From positions 1 to 64,000 of the IMG/VR virus record IMGVR_UViG_3300042558_003926: a DNA stretch of 64,000 nucleotides; one strand, written 5' to 3'. Position numbers and translations under genes: made by a program. The notes under the pieces were generated by a model. The model saw nothing but the letters and a program-made list of their open reading frames with translations, did not search any database and was not told the origin of the DNA. This document shows positions 2-12,026 of this stretch, in pieces. Within the stretch, counting starts at the first letter, position 1; every line of letters starts with the position of its first letter.

Positions 2-706
2 GGTTCATCAGGATCTTCAGGAGCTAGTGGATCTTCAGGATCATCTGGAACAAGTGGGTCTGCAGGATCTAGTGGTTCATCAGGATCTTCAGGTTCATCA
101 GGAGCTAGTGGATCATCAGGAACAAGTGGATCTAGTGGATCTAGTGGTTCATCAGGATCTTCAGGTTCATCCGGAGCTAGTGGATCTTCAGGATCTTCAG
201 GAACAAGTGGATCTAGTGGTTCATCAGGATCTTCAGGATCTAGTGGATCTTCAGGAACAAGTGGATCTAGTGGTTCATCAGGAGCTAGTGGATCTTCAGG
301 ATCTTCAGGAACAAGTGGATCTAGTGGTTCATCAGGTTCATCAGGTTCATCAGGTTCATCAGGTTCATCAGGTTCATCAGGTTCATCAGGTTCATCAGGA
401 GCTAGTGGATCCTCAGGAACAAGTGGATCTAGTGGTTCATCAGGTTCATCAGGTTCATCTGGAGCTAGTGGATCTTCAGGAACAAGTGGATCTAGTGGTT
501 CATCAGGTTCATCAGGAGCTAGTGGATCATCAGGAACAAGTGGATCTAGTGGATCTAGTGGTTCATCAGGATCTTCAGGTTCATCAGGTTCATCTGGAGC
601 TAGTGGATCTTCAGGAACAAGTGGATCTAGTGGTTCATCAGGTTCATCAGGTTCATCAGGTTCATCAGGAGAAAACGGATCTTCGGGTTCATCAGGAACT
701 TCTGGA
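2..706 (+). repeat. Coding 9-bp-period tandem repeat (GGT/GGA-TCA/TCT/ACA/GCT-TCA/AGT) encoding G-X-S triplets
   Basis: Directly visible, e.g. the (CAGGTTCAT)n run around 330-395. Confidence 0.95.
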
Positions 707-2923
707 ACAAACCTTGAGGTTAAAGACGAAGGAACTTCTTTAACTACCGCTGCATCCTCAATGAATTTCGTAGGTGCGGGCGTTACTGCAACTGCATCAG
801 GTAGTGCCGTTACTGTTACTATACCGGGTGGATCTATACCTGGATCTAATAATCAAGTAATTACATCTGACGGTGCAGGTGGTGCTGTTGCGGAATCCCT
901 ATTGACATTCGATGGAACTATAACATCCCCTTATCTTAATGTTAATTCAGTAACAGTAGGTAGAGGAGGTAATAACGTTTCCACTAACATATCAGTAGGA
1001 CAGTTAGCTTTCTCTGCCTCTACATCGGGTGGATATAACGTTTCTGTTGGTAGATTAGCATCTATAAATGTAACAGAAGGTGCATTCAATGTTGGGATAG
1101 GTGCAAGAGCTATAAATTCACTAACAACTGGATGTTCAAATGTAGCTATAGGTAGGTCTACATTACAAAATGCTACTAGTGCATGTGATAGTATAGCCAT
1201 AGGAACATATTCCCAGCAATCTTATACTCCTTCAGGTGTTATAGCAATAGGCACATCCGCTTTAGGATGTAATCAGATATCGAATATAGTAGGTATAGGT
1301 AGATCGACACTATTCCCTAACAGAGGATTTCTTAACACAGCAGTAGGACATTTTTCTTTAAGTACAAACGCAACGGGTTCGTATAACACAGCATTTGGTT
1401 ACGCCCCTCTCAAAGCGGTAACCTCCGGATCTAAAAACACGGCAGTAGGTGGTGGATGCGTTTGTCCTCAGATTCTTACTTCAACAAATCTTCCACCATT
1501 ATTCTCTAATATTTATGGAAGTCAAAGCGTAGCTATAGGTACTGCTGCTTTAGCTAAAGGAACAAACTTGAATGAGCTTGTAGCAGTGGGTGTTGGTGCT
1601 TTATATAATAATACATCAGGAACACAAAATACTGCTGTTGGTACTTTAGCTCTTGCTAAAAATTTAAACGGGGTATGTAATATAGCTATTGGTAATAAAG
1701 CTTTAGCAGGTAACAATTCCGGTGGATGTAACATAGCTATAGGATTTGAGGTTCTGTGTTTTAACCAAACTGGAGGTAGTAATATTGGTATAGGTGCAGC
1801 CAATCTCGTTAACAACTGTGTTGGTAGCCACAACGTTGCATTAGGTAGATCTGCACTATACACTAACACTTCGGGATGCGGTAATATCGCTATCAGTAGA
1901 AGAGCATTAGCTTATAATACATACGGTAGTTACAATATAGCAATGGGTAGAGGAGCTATGTACTGCAATACAACAGGATGCCATAACATTGCAATAGGTA
2001 GATCAGCTTTATATACTAACTGTACTGCATGCTTCAATATTGGTATTGGTTACAGAGCTTTAGCTAACAATGACTATAATGGTTATGGAGGTAATAGAAA
2101 TATTGCAATAGGGGTCAAAGCATTGTATAGTGCCCAAGTTACATCCGGAGCAATTGCAATAGGCTATTGTGCTCTGTTTAGCTCTTCGGGAGGAGGTAAT
2201 CTTGCTATAGGTGATTGTTCTCAGGCGTTAACTATAGGAGGAGATAGTAACGTTTCTGTTGGGGGACTCTCCTTATGTGGAAATTTAACTGGTAGTGCTA
2301 ACGTTGCAATAGGTAATAAATCATTTAAAAATAATCAATACGGACAACAAACGGTTGCGGTTGGTCATAATGCTATAGCATACGGATCGGGTCCTTATAC
2401 AAACCAATTAACAGCAGTTGGATACCGTGCGGGTTATTATTTTAGCCAGGTATATCAAATAGCGGTAGGTGCTAATGCTCAAACTTCTAACCAGGCATAT
2501 CACACTGTATGGGGTGCTGCTGCAAACAGCGTTTATAACTGTGTATGGGCAGCATGGACAACAGTATCTGACGCCAGAGATAAAGCCAACATCGAGCCAC
2601 TATCTAGGAATCTTGGTCTTAGTCTCATAAACAAGCTAAACCCAGTCTCATTTAAATGGGATCAGAGACAAAGATACGTAGATAAATGTGGATTTGAGTA
2701 TGGTGAAAAAGATGGCACATTAATTACTGCTCATAGAGAATATGGACTTATAGCTCAAGAACTTAAACAGGCTTTAGATGAATTAGGGGAACAATTTGAT
2801 GCTCTTAAATATAATAGTACACAGGATTCCTATAGATTAACTTATGAAGGATTAATAGCTCCTATAATTAAATCTATTCAGGAACTATCTGCTAGAGTCG
2901 AGTCAATAGAGAAAAAGCTATAA
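2..2923 (+). CDS. Tail fibre/adhesin, 5'-truncated: (Gly-Ser/Thr/Ala-Ser)n collagen-like stalk, YadA/Hep_Hag-like NxAIG beta-roll repeats, C-terminal peptidase S74 intramolecular chaperone
   Basis: The frame starting at nt 2 reads GSSGSSGASGSSGSSGTSG... and runs in frame into the 761..2923 ORF through VKDEGTSLTTAASSMNFVGAGVTA. It has many NIAIG/NVAIG repeats and the S74 motifs SDARDKANI, LNPVSFKW and YGLIAQEL. Confidence 0.85.
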   Translation, partial: GSSGSSGASGSSGSSGTSGSAGSSGSSGSSGSSGASGSSGTSGSSGSSGSSGSSGSSGASGSSGSSGTSGSSGSSGSSGSSGSSGTSGSSGSSGASGSSGSSGTSGSSGSSGSSGSSGSSGSSGSSGSSGSSGASGSSGTSGSSGSSGSSGSSGASGSSGTSGSSGSSGSSGASGSSGTSGSSGSSGSSGSSGSSGSSGASGSSGTSGSSGSSGSSGSSGSSGENGSSGSSGTSGTNLEVKDEGTSLTTAASSMNFVGAGVTATASGSAVTVTIPGGSIPGSNNQVITSDGAGGAVAESLLTFDGTITSPYLNVNSVTVGRGGNNVSTNISVGQLAFSASTSGGYNVSVGRLASINVTEGAFNVGIGARAINSLTTGCSNVAIGRSTLQNATSACDSIAIGTYSQQSYTPSGVIAIGTSALGCNQISNIVGIGRSTLFPNRGFLNTAVGHFSLSTNATGSYNTAFGYAPLKAVTSGSKNTAVGGGCVCPQILTSTNLPPLFSNIYGSQSVAIGTAALAKGTNLNELVAVGVGALYNNTSGTQNTAVGTLALAKNLNGVCNIAIGNKALAGNNSGGCNIAIGFEVLCFNQTGGSNIGIGAANLVNNCVGSHNVALGRSALYTNTSGCGNIAISRRALAYNTYGSYNIAMGRGAMYCNTTGCHNIAIGRSALYTNCTACFNIGIGYRALANNDYNGYGGNRNIAIGVKALYSAQVTSGAIAIGYCALFSSSGGGNLAIGDCSQALTIGGDSNVSVGGLSLCGNLTGSANVAIGNKSFKNNQYGQQTVAVGHNAIAYGSGPYTNQLTAVGYRAGYYFSQVYQIAVGANAQTSNQAYHTVWGAAANSVYNCVWAAWTTVSDARDKANIEPLSRNLGLSLINKLNPVSFKWDQRQRYVDKCGFEYGEKDGTLITAHREYGLIAQELKQALDELGEQFDALKYNSTQDSYRLTYEGLIAPIIKSIQELSARVESIEKKL

Positions 2924-2933
2924 AAAATAAATA

Positions 2934-3755
2934 ATGTCAGTACAAAAAATATTTTATAACGCATCGCTTCCGAGGTCTGGATCAACTTTGCTTCAGAATG
3001 TGATGATGCAGAATCCAGACATCTATTCTACTCCAACTTCCGGGGTTGGTGAGCTATTATTGTCTGCGAGAACTATCTATTCAAACGGTGATGCCTTCAA
3101 AGCTCAGGATCCAGAAGAAATGAAGAAAGCTTTTGGTGGATTCTGTAAGGGTGGGATTTATGGATATTTTAATGCTCTTACGGATAGACCTTATGTTCTG
3201 GAAAAAAGTAGAGCATGGTTAGGTCACAGATCTTTTGTAGACTTTTTCGACGAAAATCCTAAGATCATAGTAATGGTTAGGGATTTGAGAAGTGTATTTT
3301 CATCTATGGAAAAAAACTTTAGAAAAAATCCGCATAAGGATCCCCTGATAGTTAACGGAGCCGAATTGAAAAATATGACTACTCCTGCGAGGATAGATCA
3401 TTTTTCTGTTTCCCCTCCTATTGGTCCTTCTTTAGAGTGGCTGTTCGAATCTGTTCACCAAGGATATGATAAAGACATTCATTTTATTAAATTCGAGGAC
3501 TTTTCTATTGATCCAGAGACAGAGATCAAGAAGATATACAACTATCTAAATCTACCATATTTTAAACACGATTTCGAAAATGTTCAGCAACTAACCCACG
3601 AGAATGATGTGATTCATGGAATATTCGGGGATCATAAAATATCTCCTAAAGTTAGACCAGTTCCCGAAGATTATATTGATATATTGGGTAAAGTAGAGTC
3701 AGATAGATTAAGAAACCACTATGATTGGTTTTATAAAAGATTCAAATATATATAA
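2934..3755 (+). CDS. PAPS-dependent sulfotransferase
   Basis: 5'-phosphosulfate-binding loop LPRSGSTLL, 3'-phosphate motif MVRDLRSVFSS, and IKFEDF..DPE.EIKKIYNYL. Confidence 0.85.
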   Translation: MSVQKIFYNASLPRSGSTLLQNVMMQNPDIYSTPTSGVGELLLSARTIYSNGDAFKAQDPEEMKKAFGGFCKGGIYGYFNALTDRPYVLEKSRAWLGHRSFVDFFDENPKIIVMVRDLRSVFSSMEKNFRKNPHKDPLIVNGAELKNMTTPARIDHFSVSPPIGPSLEWLFESVHQGYDKDIHFIKFEDFSIDPETEIKKIYNYLNLPYFKHDFENVQQLTHENDVIHGIFGDHKISPKVRPVPEDYIDILGKVESDRLRNHYDWFYKRFKYI

Positions 3756-3758
3756 GAT

Positions 3759-4358
3759 ATGCCAGATCCTAAAATCATAGAATTGGAATCTAAGATAGCT
3801 AAGTTAGCAGCTATTATAAATGATCCTACCCCTTTATATAAGGAATACATCTACAAGGATGATGAAAAAAGAATCAAGCCCAATCTTAAATTAAAGCATG
3901 TTGATGAGTTAAATGAAGCTCTAATAAGACAGGCTAATGACGTGGAAGAATTTGTAAATTCAATAAAAGAAGAGATTGAGATACCAGGAGAGATTAAACA
4001 ATCTTTTGAGAATTCTATTAAGGAAAAAGAAACATTCATAAGCAAAGGAAGTGTTAACTGGAAACCAGATGACGGATTCGATCAGCCATCTTTTTATATA
4101 GAAAACAATGCACTTTACTTCAAATTCAAGACAGAAGAACCTATAGATTATGTTGAGATTAATGAAATCTCACCCAAAGGGAAGAGTATTATCACAACCC
4201 AAGGAGGAACAGTAGGGGATGGCGAATTTTTAAAGGTTCCGGTTCTAGTAGATTATCTAGAAAAAGGATCTGCTGGAAACAAATATACATTAGTTATAGT
4301 TCTAGGATCGAATCCGGGTAACCAGAGAAAGGGATTTTTTACTTACGTTTATAAATAA
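3759..4358 (+). CDS. Hypothetical protein
   Basis: 199-aa ORF packed in the operon; no motif recognised. Confidence 0.6.
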   Translation: MPDPKIIELESKIAKLAAIINDPTPLYKEYIYKDDEKRIKPNLKLKHVDELNEALIRQANDVEEFVNSIKEEIEIPGEIKQSFENSIKEKETFISKGSVNWKPDDGFDQPSFYIENNALYFKFKTEEPIDYVEINEISPKGKSIITTQGGTVGDGEFLKVPVLVDYLEKGSAGNKYTLVIVLGSNPGNQRKGFFTYVYK

Positions 4359-4363
4359 ATATT

Positions 4364-4816
4364 ATGATTTATTGGTTTACTGGGCAACCGGGACATGGAA
4401 AGACCGTTTTAGGAAAACTTCTCGTAGAGAAAATTGGAGATGATACGTTTCATATTGATGGAGATCACCTCAGGGAGATATTCAACAATAAGGATTATTC
4501 CGAAACTGGAAGAAGAAAAAATATAGATCTAGCACAAAAGATTGCACATTATTTAGAAAATCAGGGTAAGGATTCAGTGGTTTCCCTTGTCTCTCCTTAC
4601 TTGGATCAAAGAGAGGAGTTTAAAAGAATAATGGGAGATAAACTAGTTGAGATTTATGTCCATACTGAAGAGAAAAGAGGAAGGGAGGAATTCCACGTGG
4701 AAAATTACGAGCCACCCACCGAAAATTTTATAGACATTGATACTACAATAGATAATCCTGAAGATAGTATCATTAAAATAATGTCCAATGAAAAATTACA
4801 TAGCAAAGGCAGATAA
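4364..4816 (+). CDS. cysC: Adenylylsulfate (APS) kinase, compact form
   Basis: IYWFTGQPGHGKT P-loop, IDGDHLR, DYSETGRRKNI, VSLVSPY and YEPP match CysC signature motifs. Confidence 0.85.
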   Translation: MIYWFTGQPGHGKTVLGKLLVEKIGDDTFHIDGDHLREIFNNKDYSETGRRKNIDLAQKIAHYLENQGKDSVVSLVSPYLDQREEFKRIMGDKLVEIYVHTEEKRGREEFHVENYEPPTENFIDIDTTIDNPEDSIIKIMSNEKLHSKGR

Positions 4817-5186
4817 AAAAACATCATCAAACAGTTTACAGTATTCGATGTTTGTTGGTAGGTGGCAACCTTTACACGAAGGACACCAATGGCTTTTTAA
4901 CCAGTCGTTAGAGGAGGGTAAGAACGTTCTGATCTGCATAAGAGATGTTGAGCCAGATGAAAAAAATCCATTTAAACCAGATGAGGTAAAAAGAAATATA
5001 GAGGAATTTTATTCTCATCTGGTTGAATCTAAGAGAGTTAAGGTTATGATTATACCTGATATAGAATCTATAAATTATGGTAGGGGGGTTGGTTATGATG
5101 TCATAGAGCACGTTCCACCATCTGAGATATCAGATATTTCTGCTACTAAGATAAGAGAATCTTTAAAGTCGGAGGGGAAATTATGA
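4788..5186 (+). CDS. Small HIGH-superfamily (cytidylyltransferase-like) nucleotidyltransferase; candidate minimal ATP sulfurylase
   Basis: GRWQPLHEGH (HxGH) and ISATKIRE motifs; overlaps cysC. Confidence 0.75.
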   Translation: MKNYIAKADKKTSSNSLQYSMFVGRWQPLHEGHQWLFNQSLEEGKNVLICIRDVEPDEKNPFKPDEVKRNIEEFYSHLVESKRVKVMIIPDIESINYGRGVGYDVIEHVPPSEISDISATKIRESLKSEGKL

Positions 5187-5632
5187 GTAATAAATTCAAG
5201 AAATATCATATTAGATTTAACACCGTATCTAGATCTGAAGACGATAGATGGAGACTAATTGACGAAGAAGGAAAGGAGACATTGGTTTCCTCCGTAGTTG
5301 TTAATGGTTATTCATATACCACCAAAAACTGGATAGATGAAATAGGTGAATATAAATGGCACGTATCATGTGAAGGATACTGTACCATCACTGATAATGT
5401 AGCTAGAATAGAGACAACTAAGAATGAATCCGCATTAACTAGACATATATTAAAAACGGTATCATATAGAATACTCGGAACTTTAACGACAGTGATAGTT
5501 GCATATTCTTTAGGTGTTCCTTTAGAAATATCTTCCATGCTGGGAATCGGCGAACTTTTGCTGAAACCTGTAATTTATTTCTTGCACGAGAGAGCGTGGT
5601 ATAAATGGATTAGAATAGGAATTAAAAAATAA
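5183..5632 (+). CDS. Membrane protein with C-terminal DUF2061-like domain
   Basis: RHILKTVSYRILGTLTT...KPVIYFLHERAW resembles DUF2061 (KxxSWR...YYxHERxW). Confidence 0.7.
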   Translation: MSNKFKKYHIRFNTVSRSEDDRWRLIDEEGKETLVSSVVVNGYSYTTKNWIDEIGEYKWHVSCEGYCTITDNVARIETTKNESALTRHILKTVSYRILGTLTTVIVAYSLGVPLEISSMLGIGELLLKPVIYFLHERAWYKWIRIGIKK

Positions 5633-5636
5633 ATAA

Positions 5637-6512
5637 GTGGAAAGTTATTTAGTGTGGCACATAGAAGGTGGATTGGGAAAAAACATAGCAGCTACCTCTC
5701 TTATAGAGTCTTTGCATGATAGATACCCGGATCGGAAGATAATTATTGTAGCATCATATCCTGATGTTTTTTTAAATCACAGATTGATCTATAGAGTTTA
5801 CCGAATAGGAAACACACAGTATTTCTATGACGACTACATTAAAAATAAGGACACTTTAGTTTTTAGACATGAAGCTTATTACGAGAGTAATCATATCTCG
5901 AAGAGAAAGCATATAATAGATAGCTGGTGTAAATTAATGGATCTGGAATATAAGAATCAGATGCCAGTTATTAATTTCAATCTGGTTCAGCAGAGAAGTT
6001 CACAGAAATGGATTAGAGAGAAACCAATTTTTTTAATTCAAACAAACGGCGGACCCTTCAATTCAGAATCTGCATATTCGTGGGCCAGAGATATTCCTTT
6101 TGATATTTCTCTTAAAATAGCAGAGAGCATGATTAAGGATTATCACGTAATTCAGATATGTAAACCCTCTTCTAGACAAATCCCAGGTGCCGAAGTAATA
6201 TCCGATCAACTATCACCCATCGACCTTTTTCTTTTGCTAGCTCTTAGCGAAAAAAGACTTCTCATAGATTCTTGTTTACAACATGCTGCATCGGCTTTAA
6301 ACTTACCTTCCGCCGTACTTTGGATAGCTACTTCTCCCGCTAATTTTGGTTATACCCTACACAAGAATATAATTGCAAATCCACCAGAGATTGAACCTAA
6401 ATTACCTAATTCATATCTCTTCGATTATTCTTTTGATGGGGTTGCTTATGAATGTCCATATTATTCTACCGATGAAATGTTTAATGTTGGTGAGATAATA
6501 AAATCAATCTAA
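5637..6512 (+). CDS. GT-B fold glycosyltransferase, GT9/heptosyltransferase-like
   Basis: N-terminal GGLGKNIAAT; C-terminal LIDSCLQHAASALNLPSAVLW resembles the GT9 motif DSGxxHxAxAxxxPxxxL. Confidence 0.7.
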   Translation: MESYLVWHIEGGLGKNIAATSLIESLHDRYPDRKIIIVASYPDVFLNHRLIYRVYRIGNTQYFYDDYIKNKDTLVFRHEAYYESNHISKRKHIIDSWCKLMDLEYKNQMPVINFNLVQQRSSQKWIREKPIFLIQTNGGPFNSESAYSWARDIPFDISLKIAESMIKDYHVIQICKPSSRQIPGAEVISDQLSPIDLFLLLALSEKRLLIDSCLQHAASALNLPSAVLWIATSPANFGYTLHKNIIANPPEIEPKLPNSYLFDYSFDGVAYECPYYSTDEMFNVGEIIKSI

Positions 6513-6558: not shown

Positions 6559-6834
6559 ATGGAAGAAACTATTAAATTGCCAGAAGAATTGGTATTGGAA
6601 GTTCAGGCTCTTAAAGATGAACTGATGGATAATGTTATTAAAGTTGGAAGACTTAGTGTACAGAAATCTTTTTATGAAAAAGATCTTGAAATGATTAACT
6701 CCCAGCTGGATAATCTTCATGACCAAGCCGCTTTAATATACCAGAAGGAGGAGGAATTACAGAAAAAGGTAATCTCCGAATATGGTAACGGTAAACTGGA
6801 TTTTGAGTCCGGTATTTTTACTAAAAACTCCTAA
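6559..6834 (+). CDS. Small coiled-coil hypothetical protein
   Basis: Heptad-rich, ends in EYGNGKLDFESGIFT. Confidence 0.7.
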   Translation: MEETIKLPEELVLEVQALKDELMDNVIKVGRLSVQKSFYEKDLEMINSQLDNLHDQAALIYQKEEELQKKVISEYGNGKLDFESGIFTKNS

Positions 6835-6918: not shown

Positions 6919-9408
6919 ATGAGCTTCTATCCGGAGAATAAATTTCCTAAAGACGGATCCCCAGTCAGAAACACAAACGGGGAGCAATATAATTTATCTA
7001 ATCAGAGATATAATTATCACGATGGACTTCAGAATACTTCTAAAGTTAAGAATTCATCTGTAGATAATCTTTTTTCCACCACTGGAGCAGCAGAAGCTAG
7101 ATCCAAACAAATAGGCTGTGGTGGATATCACCAAGTTACAGTAGATGGTAAAACATTCTATAAGCCATGCGAAACAGCTGAGTACTATGATCTAAGAATA
7201 GAACAGCTAGAAAGTGCATTAAACTTCACGTATATAGGTAATTACCGTGTTTTAACATGGGATAAACCATTTGAATATGTTACTTCTTTTAACGGATGGA
7301 TAATAGATGCCTCCAATAGTAACAACACGGCATCTATATTAAACGGGAATGATATATCTATAGATTTCAGATATAGTATAGATGGCACAACTTGGTCTTT
7401 ATGGACAAATGTAGGTACAGCTTTAGGTGGGTTAACCAATGAGTATTCTGAGCTTTTTGATATACCTTTAGATCCTAATAATAAGTTTTATCCCGAATTT
7501 AGATTTACGTGTGTTCTAGTTAATGACGACGGAACAATAGTTTATAACACGGAAGAGCCTATAGATCCTTCTATAGTTATAGTTAACTTCGAATTGGATT
7601 TGACCTATCAGGTTGCTCCGGAAGTGGTGATATACAGACCAGCACCGATATGTACTGATGAGGTTTCTACTAGACCTATACTTTTCTCCAACTGTAATTT
7701 TACCTTTAATCCTTATGCTGTTAATAGAGCATTAAACATGTATCAGGATTTAAGTTTAATGGTTAATAATGTTTTTGGACTAGAAGTTAATTATTATTCG
7801 GTACAACCTCAAGCTAGAGGAAAAGATGTGGTACTTAAAGAGTATACCATATTCGACGTAGTTGACGAGAAATGTATAAAGGCACTAGTTCCTCAAAATC
7901 AATTCCCGGATAATAAAATAAACTTTGATCCATTCGGTCTACAATTCGAAGAACCCTTTGAAATACAAATAGATAAGAGATACTTCGAATCTATATTCGG
8001 AAGAGGATCACAGCCAAGGAAAAGAGATATTATCTACTTCCCTCTAACTAACAGAATATATCAGATTAACTCTACTTATCTCTTCAGGGACTTTATGAAC
8101 GCTCCTGTTTATTTTAAGATAGAGCTTAAAAAATATACACCAAGATCTAACACTTATTTCCAAGATCCAGCATACAAGGAAGAGCTTGATGGTATATCTC
8201 TTACTACTAGTGATCTCTTTGGTGAGGAAGTTCATGCGGAGGAGATCAAAAGTTCAAAACCACAACAATATGCTACAACAATAACACAGATGTCTCAGGA
8301 CCCGATTAGATCTTATGTTTATAAGGATCTTTCTATTATAGAGTATGATTTAAATAATAACTGGACTATAGTCCTGAATAATTATTATGATTTGTACCAG
8401 TCTTTTGCTGATGATTATGAATTTACCTATGATCCTGGTAGATATAGAAATGCTGTTAGATATAAGGTGTTACCTAAATCAGATTCAACAACAGAACTGG
8501 CTTATACATGTTGGTTTAGTCTTAAGAATTTTTACGATAATCAACAACTTGCAAGAAGATCGTATCCGGTTATAAATCTAACCCTGGAGTCATCAACTGA
8601 TGAACTATTATATTTCAATAGCTACCCAAGAAAACATAATTTACAAGTTTGGCAATCCTATGATTCCAATCCTGAAGGATATGTTGCAATCAAGGGAGAC
8701 AAACTGCACTCTGGCGGATACGAGGTTAGAACGGTTATAGACGATTATCGATTTGCAGTAGATAACAATTCAACCGATTTCTCATTAGGAACTATCATTT
8801 GGAAAATGCAGAAAGCACAGAGCAGAAACTTAATTAGTGGATTATACCTTAATGATTTAGAAGAAATAAAGGGAATTAGAATAGATTTAATCCATTCCGG
8901 AGTTATGGATGAGTTAACAAATAATTTCCTAGAAGAAGGAAGTATAGTCATCCGCTTGAATGACACCATAATAAATTCTCCACTACAGTTTGTACCAGAG
9001 TTTGGTGATTGGTATGGGGTGGTCGTCAACTTCTCTAATGTTTATAAACAGATATCCGCAAATATTTGGGAGATGACATACGATCCAACAGATCCGAACG
9101 AGCAAACTAGTAAGCTTAAGAAAGTTCATGAATCGGTTAGAATGTTTACAAATAATATAATATTCGAAGCACCTACCGATGTGGTAACTGATACGCTTAG
9201 TCCTTTCTATGAAACTGATAACAATTCTTATAAAATCTACACCGGTCCTATATGGCTTAGTAATGTTAGATTATTTAAGAATATGATAGATATAGATACG
9301 CAATCCACTGTATTGAATCAAAATACGGTGAGAGATGCACAGTTAGCTCATATTATTGATAACGCAAAACCGCTTCTGAATATTCCGAAGTTTGCAAGAA
9401 ACAGATAA
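6919..9408 (+). CDS. Neck/head-tail connector protein (T4 gp14-like core with large N- and C-terminal extensions)
   Basis: FDPFGLQFEEPFEIQIDKRYFESIFG..SQPRKRDIIYFPLTNRIYQI resembles the gp14 core; lies just before the terminase genes. Confidence 0.65.
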   Translation: MSFYPENKFPKDGSPVRNTNGEQYNLSNQRYNYHDGLQNTSKVKNSSVDNLFSTTGAAEARSKQIGCGGYHQVTVDGKTFYKPCETAEYYDLRIEQLESALNFTYIGNYRVLTWDKPFEYVTSFNGWIIDASNSNNTASILNGNDISIDFRYSIDGTTWSLWTNVGTALGGLTNEYSELFDIPLDPNNKFYPEFRFTCVLVNDDGTIVYNTEEPIDPSIVIVNFELDLTYQVAPEVVIYRPAPICTDEVSTRPILFSNCNFTFNPYAVNRALNMYQDLSLMVNNVFGLEVNYYSVQPQARGKDVVLKEYTIFDVVDEKCIKALVPQNQFPDNKINFDPFGLQFEEPFEIQIDKRYFESIFGRGSQPRKRDIIYFPLTNRIYQINSTYLFRDFMNAPVYFKIELKKYTPRSNTYFQDPAYKEELDGISLTTSDLFGEEVHAEEIKSSKPQQYATTITQMSQDPIRSYVYKDLSIIEYDLNNNWTIVLNNYYDLYQSFADDYEFTYDPGRYRNAVRYKVLPKSDSTTELAYTCWFSLKNFYDNQQLARRSYPVINLTLESSTDELLYFNSYPRKHNLQVWQSYDSNPEGYVAIKGDKLHSGGYEVRTVIDDYRFAVDNNSTDFSLGTIIWKMQKAQSRNLISGLYLNDLEEIKGIRIDLIHSGVMDELTNNFLEEGSIVIRLNDTIINSPLQFVPEFGDWYGVVVNFSNVYKQISANIWEMTYDPTDPNEQTSKLKKVHESVRMFTNNIIFEAPTDVVTDTLSPFYETDNNSYKIYTGPIWLSNVRLFKNMIDIDTQSTVLNQNTVRDAQLAHIIDNAKPLLNIPKFARNR

Positions 9409-9411
9409 TTT

Positions 9412-10206
9412 ATGCCTAGAAGAAAACCGAAACCAGAGAAAGTTGTCGAGGAAAAAATAAAGGAAAGTCTCGATTCTATAATAATGCAGGAGGCCCTTGA
9501 GAATATACTTCCTGACAGCGACGAACTACCAAGATTAAAGACAACGGATTTAATGGATTTTTCAGGAGAAAAATCTACTGCTTTATCTGATGCTAAGGCT
9601 TTACTTGATACTATAACAAAATTCTACATGGACGACACGAGCATGAGCGAGGCCTCGCACGTGGAGTTTAAAAAGAAGGTTGATGCGATGAATTTATCAT
9701 CGATGATGTTTCAGCTTAAAAGTGCTCAGCATGCTATAACAAAAATACTAGAGGAGATAGATCTTGGTAATATGCACCCTAGACTTTTTGAAGTTCTGGC
9801 TCAATTGCAATCGCAGATCATGCAGATGCCTAAAGACTACCAGGCATATCTCGAAAAGATGGAACAGAACTATAAGAAGACAAGGATAGAAGTTGATGAG
9901 AAAAAGCATTCTCAGGGTATAGTAATGGACCAATCCTCAGGAGATTCGGGATTTTATGTTAGTAACACTGCGGTTACACAAGACGGAGGACTTAAATCCA
10001 GAGGAACACGTGGAATTATGGAGGGACTGAGAGATATTATAGGTTCCGAGGTGGTGGACGTAAAACCCGAGGTACTTGATCCGAATGCCGTAGTAAATGC
10101 TAGAGAAAAGAAAATATTGGATTCGCAGAATCCTAATAATAAATCACATTTTAACGAGGAAGATCAGGAGGAAGATTTTTCTATAGAAGATGATATACTA
10201 GAATAA
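9412..10206 (+). CDS. Terminase small subunit (gp16-like)
   Basis: HPRLFEVLAQL resembles the T4-like PRAxEV motif; TAATG coupling to the large subunit. Confidence 0.7.
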   Translation: MPRRKPKPEKVVEEKIKESLDSIIMQEALENILPDSDELPRLKTTDLMDFSGEKSTALSDAKALLDTITKFYMDDTSMSEASHVEFKKKVDAMNLSSMMFQLKSAQHAITKILEEIDLGNMHPRLFEVLAQLQSQIMQMPKDYQAYLEKMEQNYKKTRIEVDEKKHSQGIVMDQSSGDSGFYVSNTAVTQDGGLKSRGTRGIMEGLRDIIGSEVVDVKPEVLDPNAVVNAREKKILDSQNPNNKSHFNEEDQEEDFSIEDDILE

Positions 10207-12026
10207 TGGAGACCGGAATAGAAAAGGTTGAACAGATAGAAACTAACCACTGGTCTACTTCCAGGGTAGAGGAATTATTAAGAAAAGTTGATGAAGAGGG
10301 ACTGGACTATAAGTCCGTTGATAATCCTTTTCATGACAATGACCCAGAATTAAAAAGATCTAATATTCTTTGGGAATATACCAGAGAGGAAATATTGGAA
10401 ATGAAAAAATGTGCTGAGGATGTCAGCTATTTCGCCAAGTATTGTAAAGTAATGACCGATACTGGTTTAGATTACATAAGGCTGAGAGACTACCAAACAT
10501 CGGTACTAAGAGAATATCAGAATCATAGGTTTAATATATTTCTAGCCCCCAGACAGGTTGGTAAATCCATCACATCATCAATAATACTAGTTTGGTATCT
10601 CTTATTCAATCACGATAAAAATGCGATGATTCTTGCCAACGTAGGGGATACTGCGGAAGAGCTAATGGATAAGATTAAGGCTATTATTAAAGGTCTTCCT
10701 TTTTATATGAAACCGGGTATGTTGGTTAACAACGTGATGACCATGAGATTTGATAATGGATGTAGGGTATTAGCTAAAACTACTACCAAAACTTCCGGTA
10801 TTGGTTTTACCATCCACTTCTTATACATGGATGAGTTTGCTCATATTAATTCTAACTTTATAGAGGCTTTCTTTAGATCAACATACCCTACTGTATCTTC
10901 ATCTAAGGTTTCTAGAATTATCATCACATCAACTCCGAATGGGATGAATAAATTTTATGAGATCTATCAAGGAGCACTGACAGGAGAAAATAGTTTTAAT
11001 CCAATAAGAGTAGACTGGTGGCAGGTTCCAGGAAGGGACGATGAGTGGAAGAAGAGAGAAATAGGTAACTTAGGAAGCGAGGAGCTTTTTAATCAAGAAT
11101 ATGGCAACCAATTTCTTAGTTCTTCCAGCCTTTTACTGGGATCTGATGAACTCAGAAAAATAAGGAATAACGAAGTAGAATACGCTTGGAGAGAGATCTC
11201 CAATCTCCATTATGCTGATGTCAATTACGAGAATCTTATATGGCATCCGAAATTTGATTTAGATAAGGCAAATCTACCAGGTAAGAAGTTTGTTTTTTCG
11301 GTGGACCTTAGTAGTGGTGCAAAGGGTGATTTTACAGTAATAAACATATTTAAGGTTACTCCACTTCCTAGAGCTGTTATTGAAAAAATGGAAGAATTTG
11401 AAGATGAAGCAGACTTTTTTGGACTGATTCAAGTTGGAGTTTTTAGAGACAATGAGATTAAACTTGAGGATATTACTAAGCTTCTACAGATACTATGTTC
11501 GGAGGTTTTTGAAGTTGATAGGGTTAAAATCGCTCTGGAAATGAACTACAAAGGTGAGTTGGTTTACGATAAACTCTCACAGAGGGATGACTTTTATGAC
11601 GAGATGTTTCTTTTTACTAAGCATACCGAATCTGCAAGGGTGCTAAAGCCAGGAATTAAATACAACGAGAAGAACAAAATGAAATATTGTGAGCTTCTTA
11701 GAAGTCTGATGAGGAGGGATAGAATCATGGTTAACGATAAAAAATGGACCATCCCCGAATTATTCACTTTTGGACTAAATAATTCTGGAACATATTCAAG
11801 TCAGAGCGGACACGATGATGTTGCTATGACTCTTGTAAATTTACCTGGATTGTTTGATGGCTATGATTTCAATCAGATAGTAGGTGAGGTATTTGATGAA
11901 TTAGAGGACAATTCATACAAAGACATGATTATCAAAAAATTAGAATCTGGATTTAGAGGAGAGGAAGAAAAAGGATACTCCACTAAAGATGGTAAAAGCT
12001 ATGGAGATTTCAACAATCTACTATAA
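10206..12026 (+). CDS. terL: Terminase large subunit (T4 gp17-like)
   Basis: LRDYQ, APRQVGKS (Walker A), LYMDEFAH (Walker B), TSTPNGMNKFY, FNQEYGNQF, GHDDVAM. Confidence 0.95.
   Translation: METGIEKVEQIETNHWSTSRVEELLRKVDEEGLDYKSVDNPFHDNDPELKRSNILWEYTREEILEMKKCAEDVSYFAKYCKVMTDTGLDYIRLRDYQTSVLREYQNHRFNIFLAPRQVGKSITSSIILVWYLLFNHDKNAMILANVGDTAEELMDKIKAIIKGLPFYMKPGMLVNNVMTMRFDNGCRVLAKTTTKTSGIGFTIHFLYMDEFAHINSNFIEAFFRSTYPTVSSSKVSRIIITSTPNGMNKFYEIYQGALTGENSFNPIRVDWWQVPGRDDEWKKREIGNLGSEELFNQEYGNQFLSSSSLLLGSDELRKIRNNEVEYAWREISNLHYADVNYENLIWHPKFDLDKANLPGKKFVFSVDLSSGAKGDFTVINIFKVTPLPRAVIEKMEEFEDEADFFGLIQVGVFRDNEIKLEDITKLLQILCSEVFEVDRVKIALEMNYKGELVYDKLSQRDDFYDEMFLFTKHTESARVLKPGIKYNEKNKMKYCELLRSLMRRDRIMVNDKKWTIPELFTFGLNNSGTYSSQSGHDDVAMTLVNLPGLFDGYDFNQIVGEVFDELEDNSYKDMIIKKLESGFRGEEEKGYSTKDGKSYGDFNNLL

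What the first reader, a model, noticed from the sequence alone, without database searches (positions are those of the whole stretch)
2934..6512. Self-contained phage cassette for PAPS synthesis, sulfation and glycosylation, embedded among virion genes
Seen: a tightly packed run of sulfotransferase, unknown gene, APS kinase, HIGH nucleotidyltransferase, DUF2061-like membrane protein and GT9-like glycosyltransferase, lying between the tail fibre and neck genes. Late-type motifs occur at 3745 (AATATATA) and 4350 (TATAAATA). Known: sulfotransferases need PAPS, made by ATP sulfurylase then CysC. Viral cysC is usually read as an auxiliary sulfur-assimilation gene, but no PAPS or sulfite reductase is present in this window. 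Inference: the cassette makes sulfated glycans on the virion (or on the host surface). In a Bacteroidota phage this could mimic sulfated polysaccharides bound by host uptake systems, or shield the particle. This is my best candidate for an undescribed system.
Basis: partly seen in the sequence, partly recalled or inferred. Interest (0 to 1): 0.8.

Follow-up and report, generated by a model that had tools for sequence, protein, structure and literature searches.

The report
Phage sulfate-activation and glycan-sulfation cassette
A freshwater jumbo phage carries, next to its tail-fibre gene, a compact gene set for making the sulfate donor PAPS and for adding sugar and sulfate to a target, and one of its genes appears to be a previously unrecognised miniature ATP sulfurylase that is also common in marine and freshwater microbes.

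Summary
The gene run at 2934-6512 is real. It holds a PAPS-type sulfotransferase, a lineage-specific unknown, a minimal APS kinase, a 132-aa HIGH nucleotidyltransferase (NT132), a DUF2061 membrane protein and a GT9-fold glycosyltransferase, all co-oriented and almost without gaps between tail fibre and neck/terminase genes. The "late promoter" motifs are at chance level.

Relatives occur in at least 180 IMG/VR contigs. The sulfotransferase pairs with the GT9-like gene in 34 of 40 dereplicated loci. APS kinase, NT and DUF2061 travel together.

The main new point concerns NT132. Its orthologues (45-70% identical) are common in cellular genomes:
- They lie directly after an APS kinase in 50 of 55 dereplicated loci.
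- They are fused to canonical APS kinases in both orders.
- In Nitrospirales they follow sulfite reductase and CysH.
- In SAR406 and Flavobacteriales they sit in polysaccharide clusters with sulfotransferases and CysQ.

I infer that NT132 is a minimal ATP sulfurylase, so the cassette would be self-contained for PAPS. Nothing is shown biochemically.

The acceptor is unknown. I favour the adjacent adhesin-like tail fibre, with host envelope glycan as the close rival. I found no prior description. This is a new variant of known kinds and is directly testable.

The parts
761..2923 (+). Tail fibre or spike with adhesin-like beta-roll repeats and a C-terminal Peptidase_S74 chaperone. It lies immediately upstream of the cassette and is the candidate protein acceptor.
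   Evidence: Pfam Peptidase_S74 at 3.2e-13 and phrog_4636 tail spike at 1e-89. The translation shows a repeated NIAIG...Y-x-N-T-S/T-G unit. The equivalent large gene upstream of the cassette in other phages matches the UspA1 trimeric-autotransporter head at 3.5e-16.
2934..3755 (+). PAPS-dependent sulfotransferase (ST273)
   Evidence: Sulfotransfer_3 at 2.8e-13 and Sulfotransfer_1 at 4.6e-10, both above cut-off. The PRxGS (5'-PSB) and RD..R....S (3'-PB) positions are invariant in 36 homologues. The profile's best solved relatives are protein-tyrosine sulfotransferases at 1e-9, then carbohydrate and small-molecule sulfotransferases. 182 relatives were found in IMG/VR.
3759..4358 (+). Unknown 199-aa protein with a coiled-coil N-terminus and a beta-rich C-terminus. 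It is lineage-specific and probably not part of the conserved system.
   Evidence: No Pfam, PHROG or NCBIfam hit. It is present only in the four closest relatives. The Atlas gave no lead above 0.7.
4364..4816 (+). Minimal APS kinase (APSK150) converting APS to PAPS. The lid segment is deleted.
   Evidence: Pfam APS_kinase at 7.8e-16, above cut-off. The family profile hits every solved APS kinase at about 1e-25 over its full length. The P-loop, DGDxxR and aromatic-x4-R-x2-N positions are conserved. A canonical CysC (1.6e-66) occupies the same slot in L032. Scores are below the NCBIfam equivalog cut-offs.
4788..5186 (+). NT132, a small HIGH-motif nucleotidyltransferase. Inferred to be a minimal ATP sulfurylase (sulfate + ATP to APS).
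   Evidence: Sequence: CTP_transf_like at 1.5e-5; ATP-sulfurylase at 9e-4, below cut-off. GRxQxxHxGH, NP, YGRxVGY and ISATxIR are invariant family-wide.

Genomic context:
- An APS kinase is adjacent in 28 of 28 viral and 50 of 55 cellular dereplicated loci.
- It is fused to canonical APS kinase in both orders.
- It follows sulfite reductase and CysH in Nitrospirales.
- It sits in sulfotransferase-rich polysaccharide clusters.
5183..5632 (+). DUF2061 membrane protein: an optional N-terminal domain (residues 1-86) plus a two-helix DUF2061 domain (89-139). Inferred to be a membrane partner or anchor of the APS kinase.
   Evidence: PF09834 at 1.1e-13. It follows the NT gene in 24 of 28 viral loci. 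Short (~70 aa) and long (~148 aa) forms exist. It is fused N-terminally to APS kinase in Chitinophagaceae chromosomes. It stays with the kinase when NT is absent (L032, L080).
5637..6512 (+). GT9-fold (heptosyltransferase-like) GT-B glycosyltransferase (GTL291)
   Evidence: The AF2 model has pLDDT 93 and pTM 0.91. Foldseek top hits are a GT9 protein (3tov), WaaF, WaaC and the protein heptosyltransferase TibC. 19 of 42 homologues give sub-threshold Glyco_transf_9 hits over the C-terminal donor-binding motif. It is adjacent to the sulfotransferase in 34 of 40 dereplicated loci.
6919..9408 (+). Downstream boundary: a large virion protein with weak neck or head-closure similarity. The terminase large subunit follows at 10206-12026.
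   Evidence: T4_neck-protein at 9e-5, below cut-off, and phrog_679 head closure at 1.7e-7. 10206-12026 matches annotated TerL of Tenacibaculum phage PTm1.

Best explanation
The block 2934-6512 is one co-transcribed accessory cassette inside the structural-gene region of a ~290-kb lake-water myophage. It works as a donor-plus-transferase unit.

Proposed steps:
1. NT132 adenylylates sulfate (ATP + sulfate to APS). This step is inferred.
2. The minimal APS kinase phosphorylates APS to PAPS. This rests on homology and on positional equivalence with canonical CysC.
3. The DUF2061 two-helix protein holds this activity at the inner membrane. This is inferred from a gene fusion.
4. The GT9-fold enzyme adds a heptose-type sugar from an ADP-sugar donor. 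The fold is shown; the donor is inferred.
5. The sulfotransferase uses the PAPS to sulfate the product. The family is shown; the acceptor is unknown.

The acceptor I consider most likely is the adhesin-like tail fibre encoded immediately upstream, or another virion surface protein. This would parallel AAH/TibC heptosylation of autotransporter adhesins. A host envelope glycan is nearly as likely.

The module was borrowed from cellular sulfated-polysaccharide and sulfate-assimilation loci, where the same kinase-NT pair occurs.

The confidence given (0.7) is for the core claim: a cassette of PAPS supply, sulfotransferase and GT9-type glycosyltransferase. Sub-claims: NT132 is an ATP sulfurylase, about 0.6; the tail fibre is the acceptor, about 0.45.
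For: Anatomy: six co-oriented ORFs with gaps of 5 nt or less, or overlaps.

Families: sulfotransferase and APS kinase score above Pfam cut-offs with catalytic or binding motifs invariant. GT9 fold at Foldseek E 1e-10.

Recurrence:
- 182 (sulfotransferase) and 195 (NT) related IMG/VR stretches.
- Sulfotransferase-anchored loci, n=40: GT9-like 34, APS kinase 26, NT 24, DUF2061 25.
- NT-anchored loci, n=28: APS kinase 28, DUF2061 24.
- A canonical CysC replaces the minimal kinase in L032.

NT132 as ATP sulfurylase:
- At least 469 cellular hits, with an APS kinase immediately upstream in 50 of 55 dereplicated loci.
- Fusions in three forms: minimal kinase-NT, canonical kinase-NT and NT-canonical kinase.
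- Rrf2 - sulfite reductase - CysH - NT operon in four Nitrospirales loci, with no other sulfurylase within 8 kb.
- SAR406 and Flavobacteriales polysaccharide clusters holding Sulfotransfer_1 or Sulfotransfer_5, a CysQ-like phosphatase, Wzx and Wza.
- Related phages that carry an ADP-heptose-like block have a separate CTP_transf_like enzyme for it, so NT132 is not the sugar nucleotidyltransferase.

DUF2061: fused to APS kinase in Chitinophagaceae.

Fibre as target:
- The cassette sits directly after a large UspA1/YadA-like fibre gene of two different families in many backbones.
- TibC is among the top fold matches.
- The sulfotransferase profile is closest to protein-tyrosine sulfotransferases.
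- The cassette lies inside the structural module.
Against: - No activity is shown for any protein.
- NT132's nearest solved relatives by sequence are NadM and archaeal NMN adenylyltransferases (1e-9, N-terminal two thirds only). Its ATP-sulfurylase Pfam score is below cut-off. Its model is only moderate (pLDDT 75), with the family-specific YGRxVGY loop unmodelled.
- In one Acidobacteriota locus a canonical cysD-cysN pair lies next to the NT-APS kinase fusion. A second sulfurylase there would be redundant.
- Half of the NT-anchored phage loci show no sulfotransferase of this family nearby. Some sit among DNA-metabolism genes.
- The minimal kinase lacks the lid segment of canonical APS kinases.
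- GT8, GT9 and GT25 enzymes in related cassettes are classical LPS-core families. The cellular counterparts act on polysaccharides. This favours a host-glycan acceptor.
- Expression timing is unknown. The late motifs are at chance level.
Confidence: 0.7

Rival explanations
1. Same cassette and chemistry, but the acceptor is a host envelope glycan (LPS or LOS core, or capsule). The phage remodels the infected cell surface with a sulfated sugar, for example to block superinfection or to stop progeny sticking to debris.
For: GT9 is a lipopolysaccharide-core family. So are the GT8 and GT25 enzymes found in related cassettes. Related phage loci add carbamoyltransferase, pyruvyltransferase, NeuB/CMP-sugar and GT4 genes typical of polysaccharide decoration. 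The cellular kinase-NT modules sit in Wzx/Wzy/Wza polysaccharide clusters. The DUF2061 membrane protein places the donor supply at the inner membrane.
Against: The cassette is embedded in the virion-gene module, next to the fibre gene, in many unrelated backbones. Surface remodelling late in a lytic cycle has less obvious benefit. No lipid-carrier, flippase or ligase genes are present in the window cassette. The best sulfotransferase relatives with structures are protein-tyrosine sulfotransferases.
Confidence: 0.35
2. The cassette is not self-contained. NT132 has another role, such as NMN or another adenylyltransferase activity, or a regulatory or scaffolding partnership with APS kinase. The phage then relies on host ATP sulfurylase for APS and supplies only the APS kinase step.
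For: The nearest solved homologues are NMN adenylyltransferases. The ATP-sulfurylase Pfam score is below cut-off. A canonical cysDN lies next to an NT-kinase fusion in Acidobacteriota. L032 and L080 carry sulfotransferase, kinase and DUF2061 without NT. Many bacteria make APS but not PAPS, so a kinase alone would suffice (general knowledge of APS-reductase pathways).
Against: Similarity to NMNAT stops before the NMN-binding segment, and NT132 is about 25 residues shorter there. NCBIfam NMNAT models score far below cut-off. NT is tied almost exclusively to APS kinase: adjacent in 91-100% of loci and fused in both orders with orthodox kinases. It occupies the sulfurylase position in the Nitrospirales Sir-CysH operon. 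No CysN lies within 8 kb in any of the 80 cellular loci.
Confidence: 0.3
3. Classical auxiliary-metabolism reading: the kinase-NT-DUF2061 trio boosts host assimilatory sulfate reduction (cysteine supply) during infection. The sulfotransferase and glycosyltransferase are merely neighbouring accessory genes.
For: This is the published reading of phage cysC (bioRxiv 10.1101/2023.05.30.542503). The trio occurs in phage loci without a recognisable sulfotransferase. The cellular NT gene occurs in an assimilatory operon and next to MetK/AhcY.
Against: In this window the trio is in the same tight gene string as a PAPS-dependent sulfotransferase. 26 of 40 sulfotransferase loci carry the kinase within about 5 kb. 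No CysH-like gene was found in the 64-kb window, though this is a weak test. PAPS is a dead end for hosts that reduce APS directly.
Confidence: 0.12

Closest known systems
Bifunctional PAPS synthases (metazoan PAPSS1/2, kinase-sulfurylase order; fungal and Aquifex Sat-CysC, sulfurylase-kinase order)
   Same: Two-step sulfate activation by a HIGH-superfamily adenylyltransferase plus an APS kinase. The NT family is found fused to APS kinase in both orders, as the canonical domains are. The APS kinase half is a true family member.
   Different: NT132 has a core of about 115 aa, against roughly 390 aa for Sat-type sulfurylase. It has no PUA-like N-domain and fails the Pfam ATP-sulfurylase cut-off. 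By sequence it is closer to NMN adenylyltransferases. The kinase lacks the lid segment. A DUF2061 membrane partner is added. Activity is untested.
Rhizobial NodP/NodQ + NodH (dedicated PAPS supply plus sulfotransferase for Nod-factor sulfation). Cited from established knowledge.
   Same: A mobile, self-contained cassette that makes its own PAPS for a dedicated carbohydrate sulfotransferase, independent of housekeeping sulfur assimilation.
   Different: NodPQ are CysD/CysN-CysC paralogues, a different sulfurylase class. The element is a plasmid or symbiosis island, not a virus. The acceptor is known there and unknown here.
Phage cysC / cysH auxiliary metabolic genes (e.g. 62 cysC-bearing freshwater phage genomes, bioRxiv 10.1101/2023.05.30.542503)
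   Same: APS-kinase genes in large freshwater phages, transcribed in situ according to that study.
   Different: That work reads them as assimilatory sulfate reduction and does not mention sulfotransferases or PAPS use. Here the kinase is linked to a sulfotransferase, a GT9-like enzyme, the NT partner and DUF2061.
AAH-AIDA-I and TibC-TibA: GT9-like bacterial autotransporter heptosyltransferases encoded next to their adhesin substrate
   Same: A GT9-fold enzyme (TibC is among the top fold matches) is encoded beside a beta-roll or beta-helix adhesin-like protein. Related phages carry an ADP-heptose-like pathway.
   Different: No test of protein glycosylation was made. TibC's iron-finger and dodecamer features were not examined. 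WaaC and WaaF (LPS enzymes) match equally well. No sulfation is known in that system.
Mycobacteriophage virion glycosylation (Freeman et al. 2023, PMC10527164, as cited in PMC12619734)
   Same: Phage-encoded glycosyltransferases located among structural genes that decorate virion proteins.
   Different: Different GT families, Gram-positive-like hosts, and no sulfate or donor-synthesis genes. Virion modification here is only inferred.
Cellular sulfated-polysaccharide gene clusters (SAR406 and Flavobacteriales loci found here; sulfated capsule clusters of marine bacteria, e.g. PMC11641403)
   Same: The same kinase-NT pair sits with sulfotransferases, a CysQ-like phosphatase, a flippase and an exporter. 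This is the likely evolutionary source of the phage module.
   Different: The phage cassette lacks polymerase, flippase and export genes and sits in a virion module.

Membership tests
PAPS-dependent sulfotransferases (Pfam Sulfotransfer_3 / Sulfotransfer_1) | Profile score above the curated cut-off | tested here: met
   51.1 bits against a cut-off of 27, and 39.8 against 22.
PAPS-dependent sulfotransferases (Pfam Sulfotransfer_3 / Sulfotransfer_1) | 5'-phosphosulfate-binding loop (PxxGS/T) and 3'-phosphate-binding motif (RD...S) | tested here: met
   P13, R14, G16 and S17, and R116, D117, R119 and S124, are invariant in 36 homologues. They align to the same motifs of TPST1.
PAPS-dependent sulfotransferases (Pfam Sulfotransfer_3 / Sulfotransfer_1) | Catalytic base and acceptor specificity | tested here: inconclusive
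   The position of the TPST catalytic Glu aligns to an invariant T-P-T-S-G stretch, with a near-invariant Glu a few residues later. The acceptor type cannot be read from this.
APS kinase (CysC) | Profile score above family cut-offs | tested here: inconclusive
   Pfam is met: 58.9 bits against 21.1. NCBIfam equivalog and subfamily models are not met: 59-65 bits against 127-139. The family profile hits all solved APS kinases at about 1e-25.
APS kinase (CysC) | P-loop, DGDxxR and the aromatic/Arg/Asn APS-binding positions | tested here: met
   G7, G12, K13, D32, D34, R37 and R50 are invariant; N53 is near-invariant; Y45 is aromatic. They align to the corresponding residues of P. chrysogenum APS kinase.
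APS kinase (CysC) | Mobile lid segment (about 20 residues before the PYE.P motif) | tested here: not met
   The segment is deleted in the whole minimal subfamily, relative to canonical CysC (L032) and to 1d6j.
APS kinase (CysC) | Functional equivalence in context | tested here: met
   Canonical CysC (1.6e-66) occupies the same sulfotransferase-kinase-DUF2061 slot in L032. Minimal and canonical kinases alternate upstream of NT in SAR406 clusters.
Sat-type ATP sulfurylase (Pfam ATP-sulfurylase PF01747) | Profile score above cut-off | tested here: not met
   19.1 bits against 24.3, covering only the HxxH region. No ATP sulfurylase appears among sequence hits in the PDB. Weak fold matches appear at ranks 34-42.
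Sat-type ATP sulfurylase (Pfam ATP-sulfurylase PF01747) | HxxH nucleotide-binding motif | tested here: met
   H30, G32 and H33 are invariant across phage, cellular and fused members.
Sat-type ATP sulfurylase (Pfam ATP-sulfurylase PF01747) | GRD(HAG) sulfate loop and N-terminal PUA-like domain | tested here: not met
   The protein is 132 aa, with no room for the extra domain. It has an invariant YGRxVGY loop instead (GRD in some fused phage forms). Whether that loop is equivalent is unknown. The GRD motif itself is recalled from memory.
Sat-type ATP sulfurylase (Pfam ATP-sulfurylase PF01747) | ATP + sulfate to APS activity | not testable with these tools
   This needs an enzyme assay or cysDN complementation. 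Only genomic context supports it.
NMN adenylyltransferase (archaeal / NadM type) | Profile score above equivalog cut-offs | tested here: not met
   24-37 bits against cut-offs of 127-449 for all NMNAT models.
NMN adenylyltransferase (archaeal / NadM type) | N-terminal GRxQPxHxGH and NPF motifs | tested here: met
   Shared with NadM and archaeal NMNAT in the alignments.
NMN adenylyltransferase (archaeal / NadM type) | C-terminal NMN-binding segment | tested here: not met
   Homology to NMNAT ends at profile position 84-94. The remainder is shorter and family-specific.
Glycosyltransferase family 9 (heptosyltransferases) | GT-B fold most similar to GT9 structures | tested here: met
   Foldseek top 31 hits, except two plant NDH subunits, are GT9 enzymes. 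E values run from 1.7e-10 to 9e-6, with TM up to 0.68. The model has pLDDT 93.
Glycosyltransferase family 9 (heptosyltransferases) | Pfam Glyco_transf_9 score above cut-off | tested here: not met
   11.4 bits against 22 for the window protein. 19 of 42 homologues give sub-threshold hits, all on the C-terminal donor-binding motif. The profile finds no PDB sequence.
Glycosyltransferase family 9 (heptosyltransferases) | ADP-heptose donor and N-terminal catalytic Asp | not tested
   The donor is inferred only from ADP-heptose-like genes in related phage loci. From memory, WaaC has an Asp where this family has the invariant GGLGK. No residue-level structural alignment was available.
Bacterial autotransporter heptosyltransferases (AAH/TibC) | GT9-like fold plus adjacency to a beta-roll adhesin substrate gene | tested here: inconclusive
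   TibC matches at 3.5e-7, no better than WaaC or WaaF. An adhesin-like fibre gene is adjacent. The iron-finger and dodecamer features were not examined.
DUF2061 (PF09834) | Profile score above cut-off | tested here: met
   51.8 bits against 23.1 at residues 89-139.

The most novel reading that the evidence does not exclude
The NT132 family is a third, miniature class of ATP sulfurylase. It is used by SAR406, Bacteroidota, Nitrospirales, marine group III archaea and many phages. This phage uses it in a fully self-contained PAPS pathway to put a sulfated heptose-type glycan on its adhesin-like tail fibre. Sulfated virions would be a property not known for any phage. Many 'viral cysC sulfur-assimilation AMGs' would then in fact be donor supply for sulfation.
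Probability: 0.25. Interest if true: 0.9.

Novelty: new variant of a known kind. Interest (0 to 1): 0.72.

Why it matters
- Sulfate activation is a central reaction with two known enzyme classes (Sat and CysDN). A third class with a core of about 115 residues would fill 'missing' sulfurylase steps in abundant uncultured lineages. It is currently annotated only as 'cytidyltransferase-like'. It would also be a very small part for engineering PAPS supply.
- Phage cysC is currently counted as a sulfur-assimilation AMG in ecological surveys. Its linkage to sulfotransferases argues that at least part of it serves sulfation instead.
- Sulfated glycans on a phage particle, or on an infected cell, would be a new kind of phage-host surface chemistry in lakes and oceans, where sulfated polysaccharides are major substrates for Bacteroidota.
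- All steps are testable with standard expression, complementation and mass spectrometry.

Tried and rejected
1. NT132 as the heptose-1-phosphate adenylyltransferase (HldC/HldE-like) feeding the GT9 enzyme. I raised this after finding HAD, PfkB and epimerase genes between kinase and NT in some loci. I rejected it because those loci carry their own, better-scoring CTP_transf_like gene inside that block, and because NT tracks APS kinase, not GT9.
2. A NadR-like pair of nicotinamide-riboside kinase plus NMNAT for NAD salvage. Rejected because the kinase partner is often an orthodox CysC (up to 230 bits) and keeps the APS-binding residues.
3. Late promoter motifs: at chance level. The sigma-70 and terminator scans were uninformative.
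4. hhalign of all neighbour clusters against the sulfotransferase alignment, to find hidden sulfotransferases. It was too insensitive: it missed a Pfam-positive sulfotransferase.
5. DUF2061 homologue search: it returned only close phage-type relatives. The literature gives no function.
6. Atlas searches for unk199 and for the DUF2061 N-domain gave no lead.
7. PDB sequence searches for two conserved unknown neighbours of the cellular module found nothing.
8. The nearest GenBank phages have no similar DNA.
9. RNA evidence amounts to a single 218-nt metatranscriptome contig. This is too little to speak of expression or timing.
10. Literature searches for a described phage cassette of sulfotransferase, APS kinase and glycosyltransferase, or for a cytidylyltransferase-like ATP sulfurylase, found none. 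The library is limited to open-access papers.

Full report
**What is there.**

The window is the first 64 kb of IMG/VR contig IMGVR_UViG_3300042558_003926, which is 289,651 bp long. Its DNA is present in more than 20 lake-water metagenomes from 2018 to 2024. All genes of interest lie on the + strand:

| Coordinates | Length | Assignment |
|---|---|---|
| 761-2923 | 720 aa | tail fibre |
| 2934-3755 | 273 aa | sulfotransferase, ST273 |
| 3759-4358 | 199 aa | unknown |
| 4364-4816 | 150 aa | APS-kinase-like, APSK150 |
| 4788-5186 | 132 aa | HIGH nucleotidyltransferase, NT132 |
| 5183-5632 | 149 aa | DUF2061 protein |
| 5637-6512 | 291 aa, GTG start | GTL291 |
| 6559-6834 | 91 aa | small coiled-coil protein |
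| 6919-9408 | 829 aa | weak neck or head-closure similarity |
| 10206-12026 | 606 aa | large terminase |

Gaps inside the cassette are 3-5 nt, or the genes overlap by 29 nt and 4 nt. It therefore reads as one transcription unit.

Its 'late-type' motifs are not meaningful. TATAAATA occurs 9 times in the window against 11.4 expected, and the copy at 4350 is the end of a coding sequence. Simple promoter and terminator scans do not exceed shuffled controls.

**Individual proteins.**

- *ST273* passes the Pfam cut-offs for Sulfotransfer_3 and Sulfotransfer_1. The two PAPS-binding motifs are invariant across 36 homologues. Its profile is closest to protein-tyrosine sulfotransferases among solved structures (1e-9). 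Glycopeptide, polyketide and heparan-sulfate sulfotransferases follow. The acceptor class cannot be read from this.
- *APSK150* passes Pfam APS_kinase. A family profile matches every solved APS kinase at about 1e-25 over its whole length. It keeps the P-loop, DGDxxR and the aromatic, Arg and Asn positions that align with APS-binding residues of the fungal enzyme. It lacks the lid segment of about 20 residues and misses the NCBIfam equivalog cut-offs.
- *GTL291* has no significant sequence-family hit. Its confident model (pLDDT 93) matches GT9 heptosyltransferases first: 3tov, WaaF, WaaC and the protein heptosyltransferase TibC.
- *The DUF2061 protein* has an N-terminal domain of unknown kind and a two-helix DUF2061 domain. 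Short forms lacking the N-domain are common.
- *The 199-aa protein* occurs only in the four nearest relatives. It is probably not part of the system.

**Recurrence in phages.**

- Searching IMG/VR with ST273 gave 182 related stretches, and with NT132 gave 195.
- I dereplicated the loci and required 4 kb on both sides.
  - Sulfotransferase-anchored loci (n=40) carry the GT9-like gene in 34, the APS kinase in 26, NT in 24 and DUF2061 in 25.
  - NT-anchored loci (n=28) carry the kinase in 28, DUF2061 in 24, an ST273-family gene in 14 and the GT9-like gene in 15.
- The usual order is: large fibre gene, then (GT8), (second GT9-like), GT9-like, sulfotransferase, kinase, NT, DUF2061, then sheath or neck genes.
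- Two sub-modules therefore exist. One is a GT9-like plus sulfotransferase pair. The other is a kinase-NT-DUF2061 trio. They are often, but not always, joined.
- In L032 a canonical CysC (APS_kinase 1.6e-66) replaces the minimal kinase between sulfotransferase and DUF2061. This supports APS-kinase function at that position.
- Other NT-anchored phage loci hold different sulfotransferases (Sulfotransfer_1). They also hold a carbamoyltransferase, GT4, GT25, a pyruvyltransferase and NeuB/CMP-sugar genes.
- Some loci lie among DNA-metabolism genes with no recognisable sulfotransferase.

**What NT132 is.**

Taken alone, the sequence says only 'small HIGH-motif nucleotidyltransferase'.
- CTP_transf_like scores 1.5e-5. 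A weak ATP-sulfurylase hit is below cut-off.
- The nearest solved relatives are NadM and archaeal NMN adenylyltransferases (1e-9). The match covers only the N-terminal two thirds and ends before the NMN-binding part.
- The model is moderate (pLDDT 75), and the family-specific loop is unmodelled.

I first suspected an ADP-heptose enzyme. Some loci insert HAD, PfkB-kinase and epimerase genes between kinase and NT. But that inserted block has its own, stronger CTP_transf_like gene (2e-14) and a cupin isomerase. NT132 is therefore a different function.

The decisive evidence came from cellular genomes. A scan of one genome per species found at least 469 relatives that are 45-70% identical. They occur in Marinimicrobia (SAR406), Flavobacteriales, Chitinophagaceae, Saprospiraceae, Nitrospirales, marine group III Euryarchaeota and others.

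- *Adjacency.* In 50 of 55 dereplicated loci an APS kinase gene lies immediately upstream. It is either the minimal type or a canonical CysC.
- *SAR406.* The pair sits in a capsule-type cluster with Sulfotransfer_1, Sulfotransfer_5, Wzy, Wzx and Wza. A Sulfotransfer_5 homologue is present in 15 loci.
- *Flavobacteriales.* The pair is followed by a CysQ-like phosphatase, a flippase and three Sulfotransfer_1 genes.
- *Nitrospirales.* In four loci the NT gene directly follows an Rrf2 regulator, sulfite reductase and CysH. No APS kinase and no CysN lie nearby. This is the position where an ATP sulfurylase is expected.
- *Fusions.* An exhaustive profile search found 83 clusters at E of 1e-30 or better, and 905 at 1e-10 or better. 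Among them are minimal kinase-NT, canonical kinase-NT, NT-canonical kinase and NT-DHHA1 fusions. DHHA1 is the domain of NrnA-type pAp phosphatases, from general knowledge.
- *Public names.* These are only 'cytidyltransferase-like protein' or 'adenylyl-sulfate kinase'.

The simplest reading is that NT132 catalyses the step before APS kinase, that is, ATP sulfurylase.

Caveats:
- One Acidobacteriota locus has canonical cysD-cysN right beside an NT-kinase fusion and GT-sulfotransferase giants.
- In some Flavobacteriales and in MG-III archaea the pair sits next to MetK and AhcY rather than sulfotransferases.
- No biochemistry exists.

I put about 0.6 on ATP sulfurylase activity.

**DUF2061.**

In Chitinophagaceae chromosomes the gene upstream of NT is a DUF2061-APS kinase fusion of 232 aa (about a dozen loci). 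In phages DUF2061 follows NT. It stays with the kinase when NT is absent (L032, L080). I infer a membrane tether or partner for the kinase. The literature gives no function.

**The acceptor.**

Nothing here shows it.

*For a virion protein:*
- The cassette lies inside the structural module. It sits directly after a large fibre gene of two different families in many otherwise different backbones.
- Those fibres have trimeric-autotransporter-type head repeats. This is seen in the window fibre translation and in a UspA1 match at 3.5e-16 for the other family.
- GT9-like enzymes of the AAH/TibC type heptosylate exactly such adhesins and are encoded beside them. TibC is among the top fold hits.
- The sulfotransferase profile is nearest to protein-tyrosine sulfotransferases.

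*For a host glycan:*
- GT8, GT9 and GT25 are LPS-core families.
- Related loci carry typical polysaccharide-decorating enzymes.
- The cellular source modules act in polysaccharide clusters.
- DUF2061 points to the membrane.

I favour the fibre slightly, at roughly 0.45 against 0.35.

**Host and setting.**

- The terminase is about 33% identical to those of Sphingomonas phage PAU, Tenacibaculum phages PTm1/PTm5 and Lak phages.
- The closest cellular NT homologues are in Crocinitomicaceae. Related phage-like contigs are binned with Flavobacteriaceae and Sediminibacterium MAGs.
- A described lineage of freshwater large phages related to Lak phages is predicted to infect Flavobacteriia and has several core glycosyltransferases. 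That paper does not mention sulfur genes (PMC12619734).
- A Bacteroidota host is plausible but unproven.
- One 218-nt contig of a lake metatranscriptome is identical to 4784-5001. This is only a hint of transcription.

**Comparison with what is known.**

- Phage cysC is known and is read as assimilatory sulfate reduction. Phage sulfotransferases are annotated in a few cyanophages, at about 28% identity to ST273.
- Phage glycosyltransferases that decorate virions, or convert host O-antigens, are known.
- I did not find, in the searchable literature, a cassette joining PAPS synthesis, a sulfotransferase and a GT9-like enzyme in phages. I also did not find any description of this NT family as a sulfurylase.
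- The nearest functional analogue is the rhizobial NodPQ-NodH set, known from established literature.
- I rate the finding as a new variant of known kinds. It carries an embedded enzyme-family hypothesis of broader reach than the phage itself.

Noticed in passing
L130, L153, L154, L146 (between kinase and NT genes); L100:6837-8336 and L100:1901-2764: Some related phages insert a five-gene sugar-nucleotide block between the APS kinase and NT132. It holds a cupin isomerase, a small HAD phosphatase, a separate CTP_transf_like nucleotidyltransferase, a PfkB kinase and an SDR epimerase. It looks like an ADP-heptose-type pathway with a non-canonical isomerase, which would feed the GT9-like enzymes.
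   Followed up: partly
e.g. L104:4380-4727; 8 of 28 NT-anchored viral loci: A HAD-like phosphatase of about 112 aa often sits alone between the APS kinase and NT genes. It could be a pyrophosphatase or a pAp phosphatase that pulls the pathway. Related hints are a DHH-family protein after DUF2061 in L080 and an NT-DHHA1 fusion (P0248).
   Followed up: no
L247 (Flavobacteriales SAG) and L248 (marine group III archaeon): In two very distant lineages the APS kinase-NT pair lies next to SAM synthetase and SAH hydrolase. In the archaeon it also lies next to MetH, MTHFR and SHMT. This links the pair to the methionine/SAM cycle rather than to sulfotransferases. The Flavobacteriales loci also have a second tandem CTP_transf_like gene.
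   Followed up: partly
L243 (Chitinophagaceae chromosome OY970254.1): The DUF2061-APS kinase fusion and the NT gene are flanked by an Asp/Arg hydroxylase, a 2OG-Fe(II) oxygenase, unknown 234-aa and 321-aa proteins, and three or four small 'phage tail collar domain' proteins. This may be a protein hydroxylation and sulfation system. The arrangement is conserved in about a dozen genomes.
   Followed up: partly
L081:5578-6324 (Xylella phage Salvo gp32, annotated 'kinase'); L162:4608-5339 (Stenotrophomonas phage DLP_6): Cultured Xylella, Xanthomonas and Stenotrophomonas phages encode a single-chain APS-kinase-like plus NT fusion (phrog_10255). It lies among early and DNA-metabolism genes, with no annotated sulfotransferase nearby. 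These are tractable systems for testing the enzyme pair.
   Followed up: partly
window 761-2923: The tail fibre is cysteine-rich. It repeats a unit ending in Y-x-N-T-S/T-G many times, so a Tyr and an N-x-S/T sequon recur at the same place in each beta-roll turn. These are conceivable modification sites. Some relatives (L014, L016, L028) carry two sulfotransferase copies.
   Followed up: no
window 27-743: A 238-aa ORF with internal repeats. Its DNA is 69% identical to about 40 places in 735-kb uncultured megaphage records, and a short part matches a cyanophage baseplate wedge gene. It is probably a repeat-containing baseplate or fibre protein.
   Followed up: no
window 4784-5001: One 218-nt contig from a 2017 lake metatranscriptome is identical to the start of the NT132 gene. 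The cassette DNA is present at 89-100% of sampled words in 23 lake-water metagenomes from 2018-2024, indicating a persistent phage population.
   Followed up: partly
L156:3893-11660: One phage places the kinase-HAD-NT-DUF2061 set between NeuB, a polysaccharide pyruvyltransferase and a CMP-sugar synthetase on one side, and a weak Maf/MptE-like domain protein on the other. This suggests nonulosonic-acid glycosylation, possibly of a filament-like protein.
   Followed up: no
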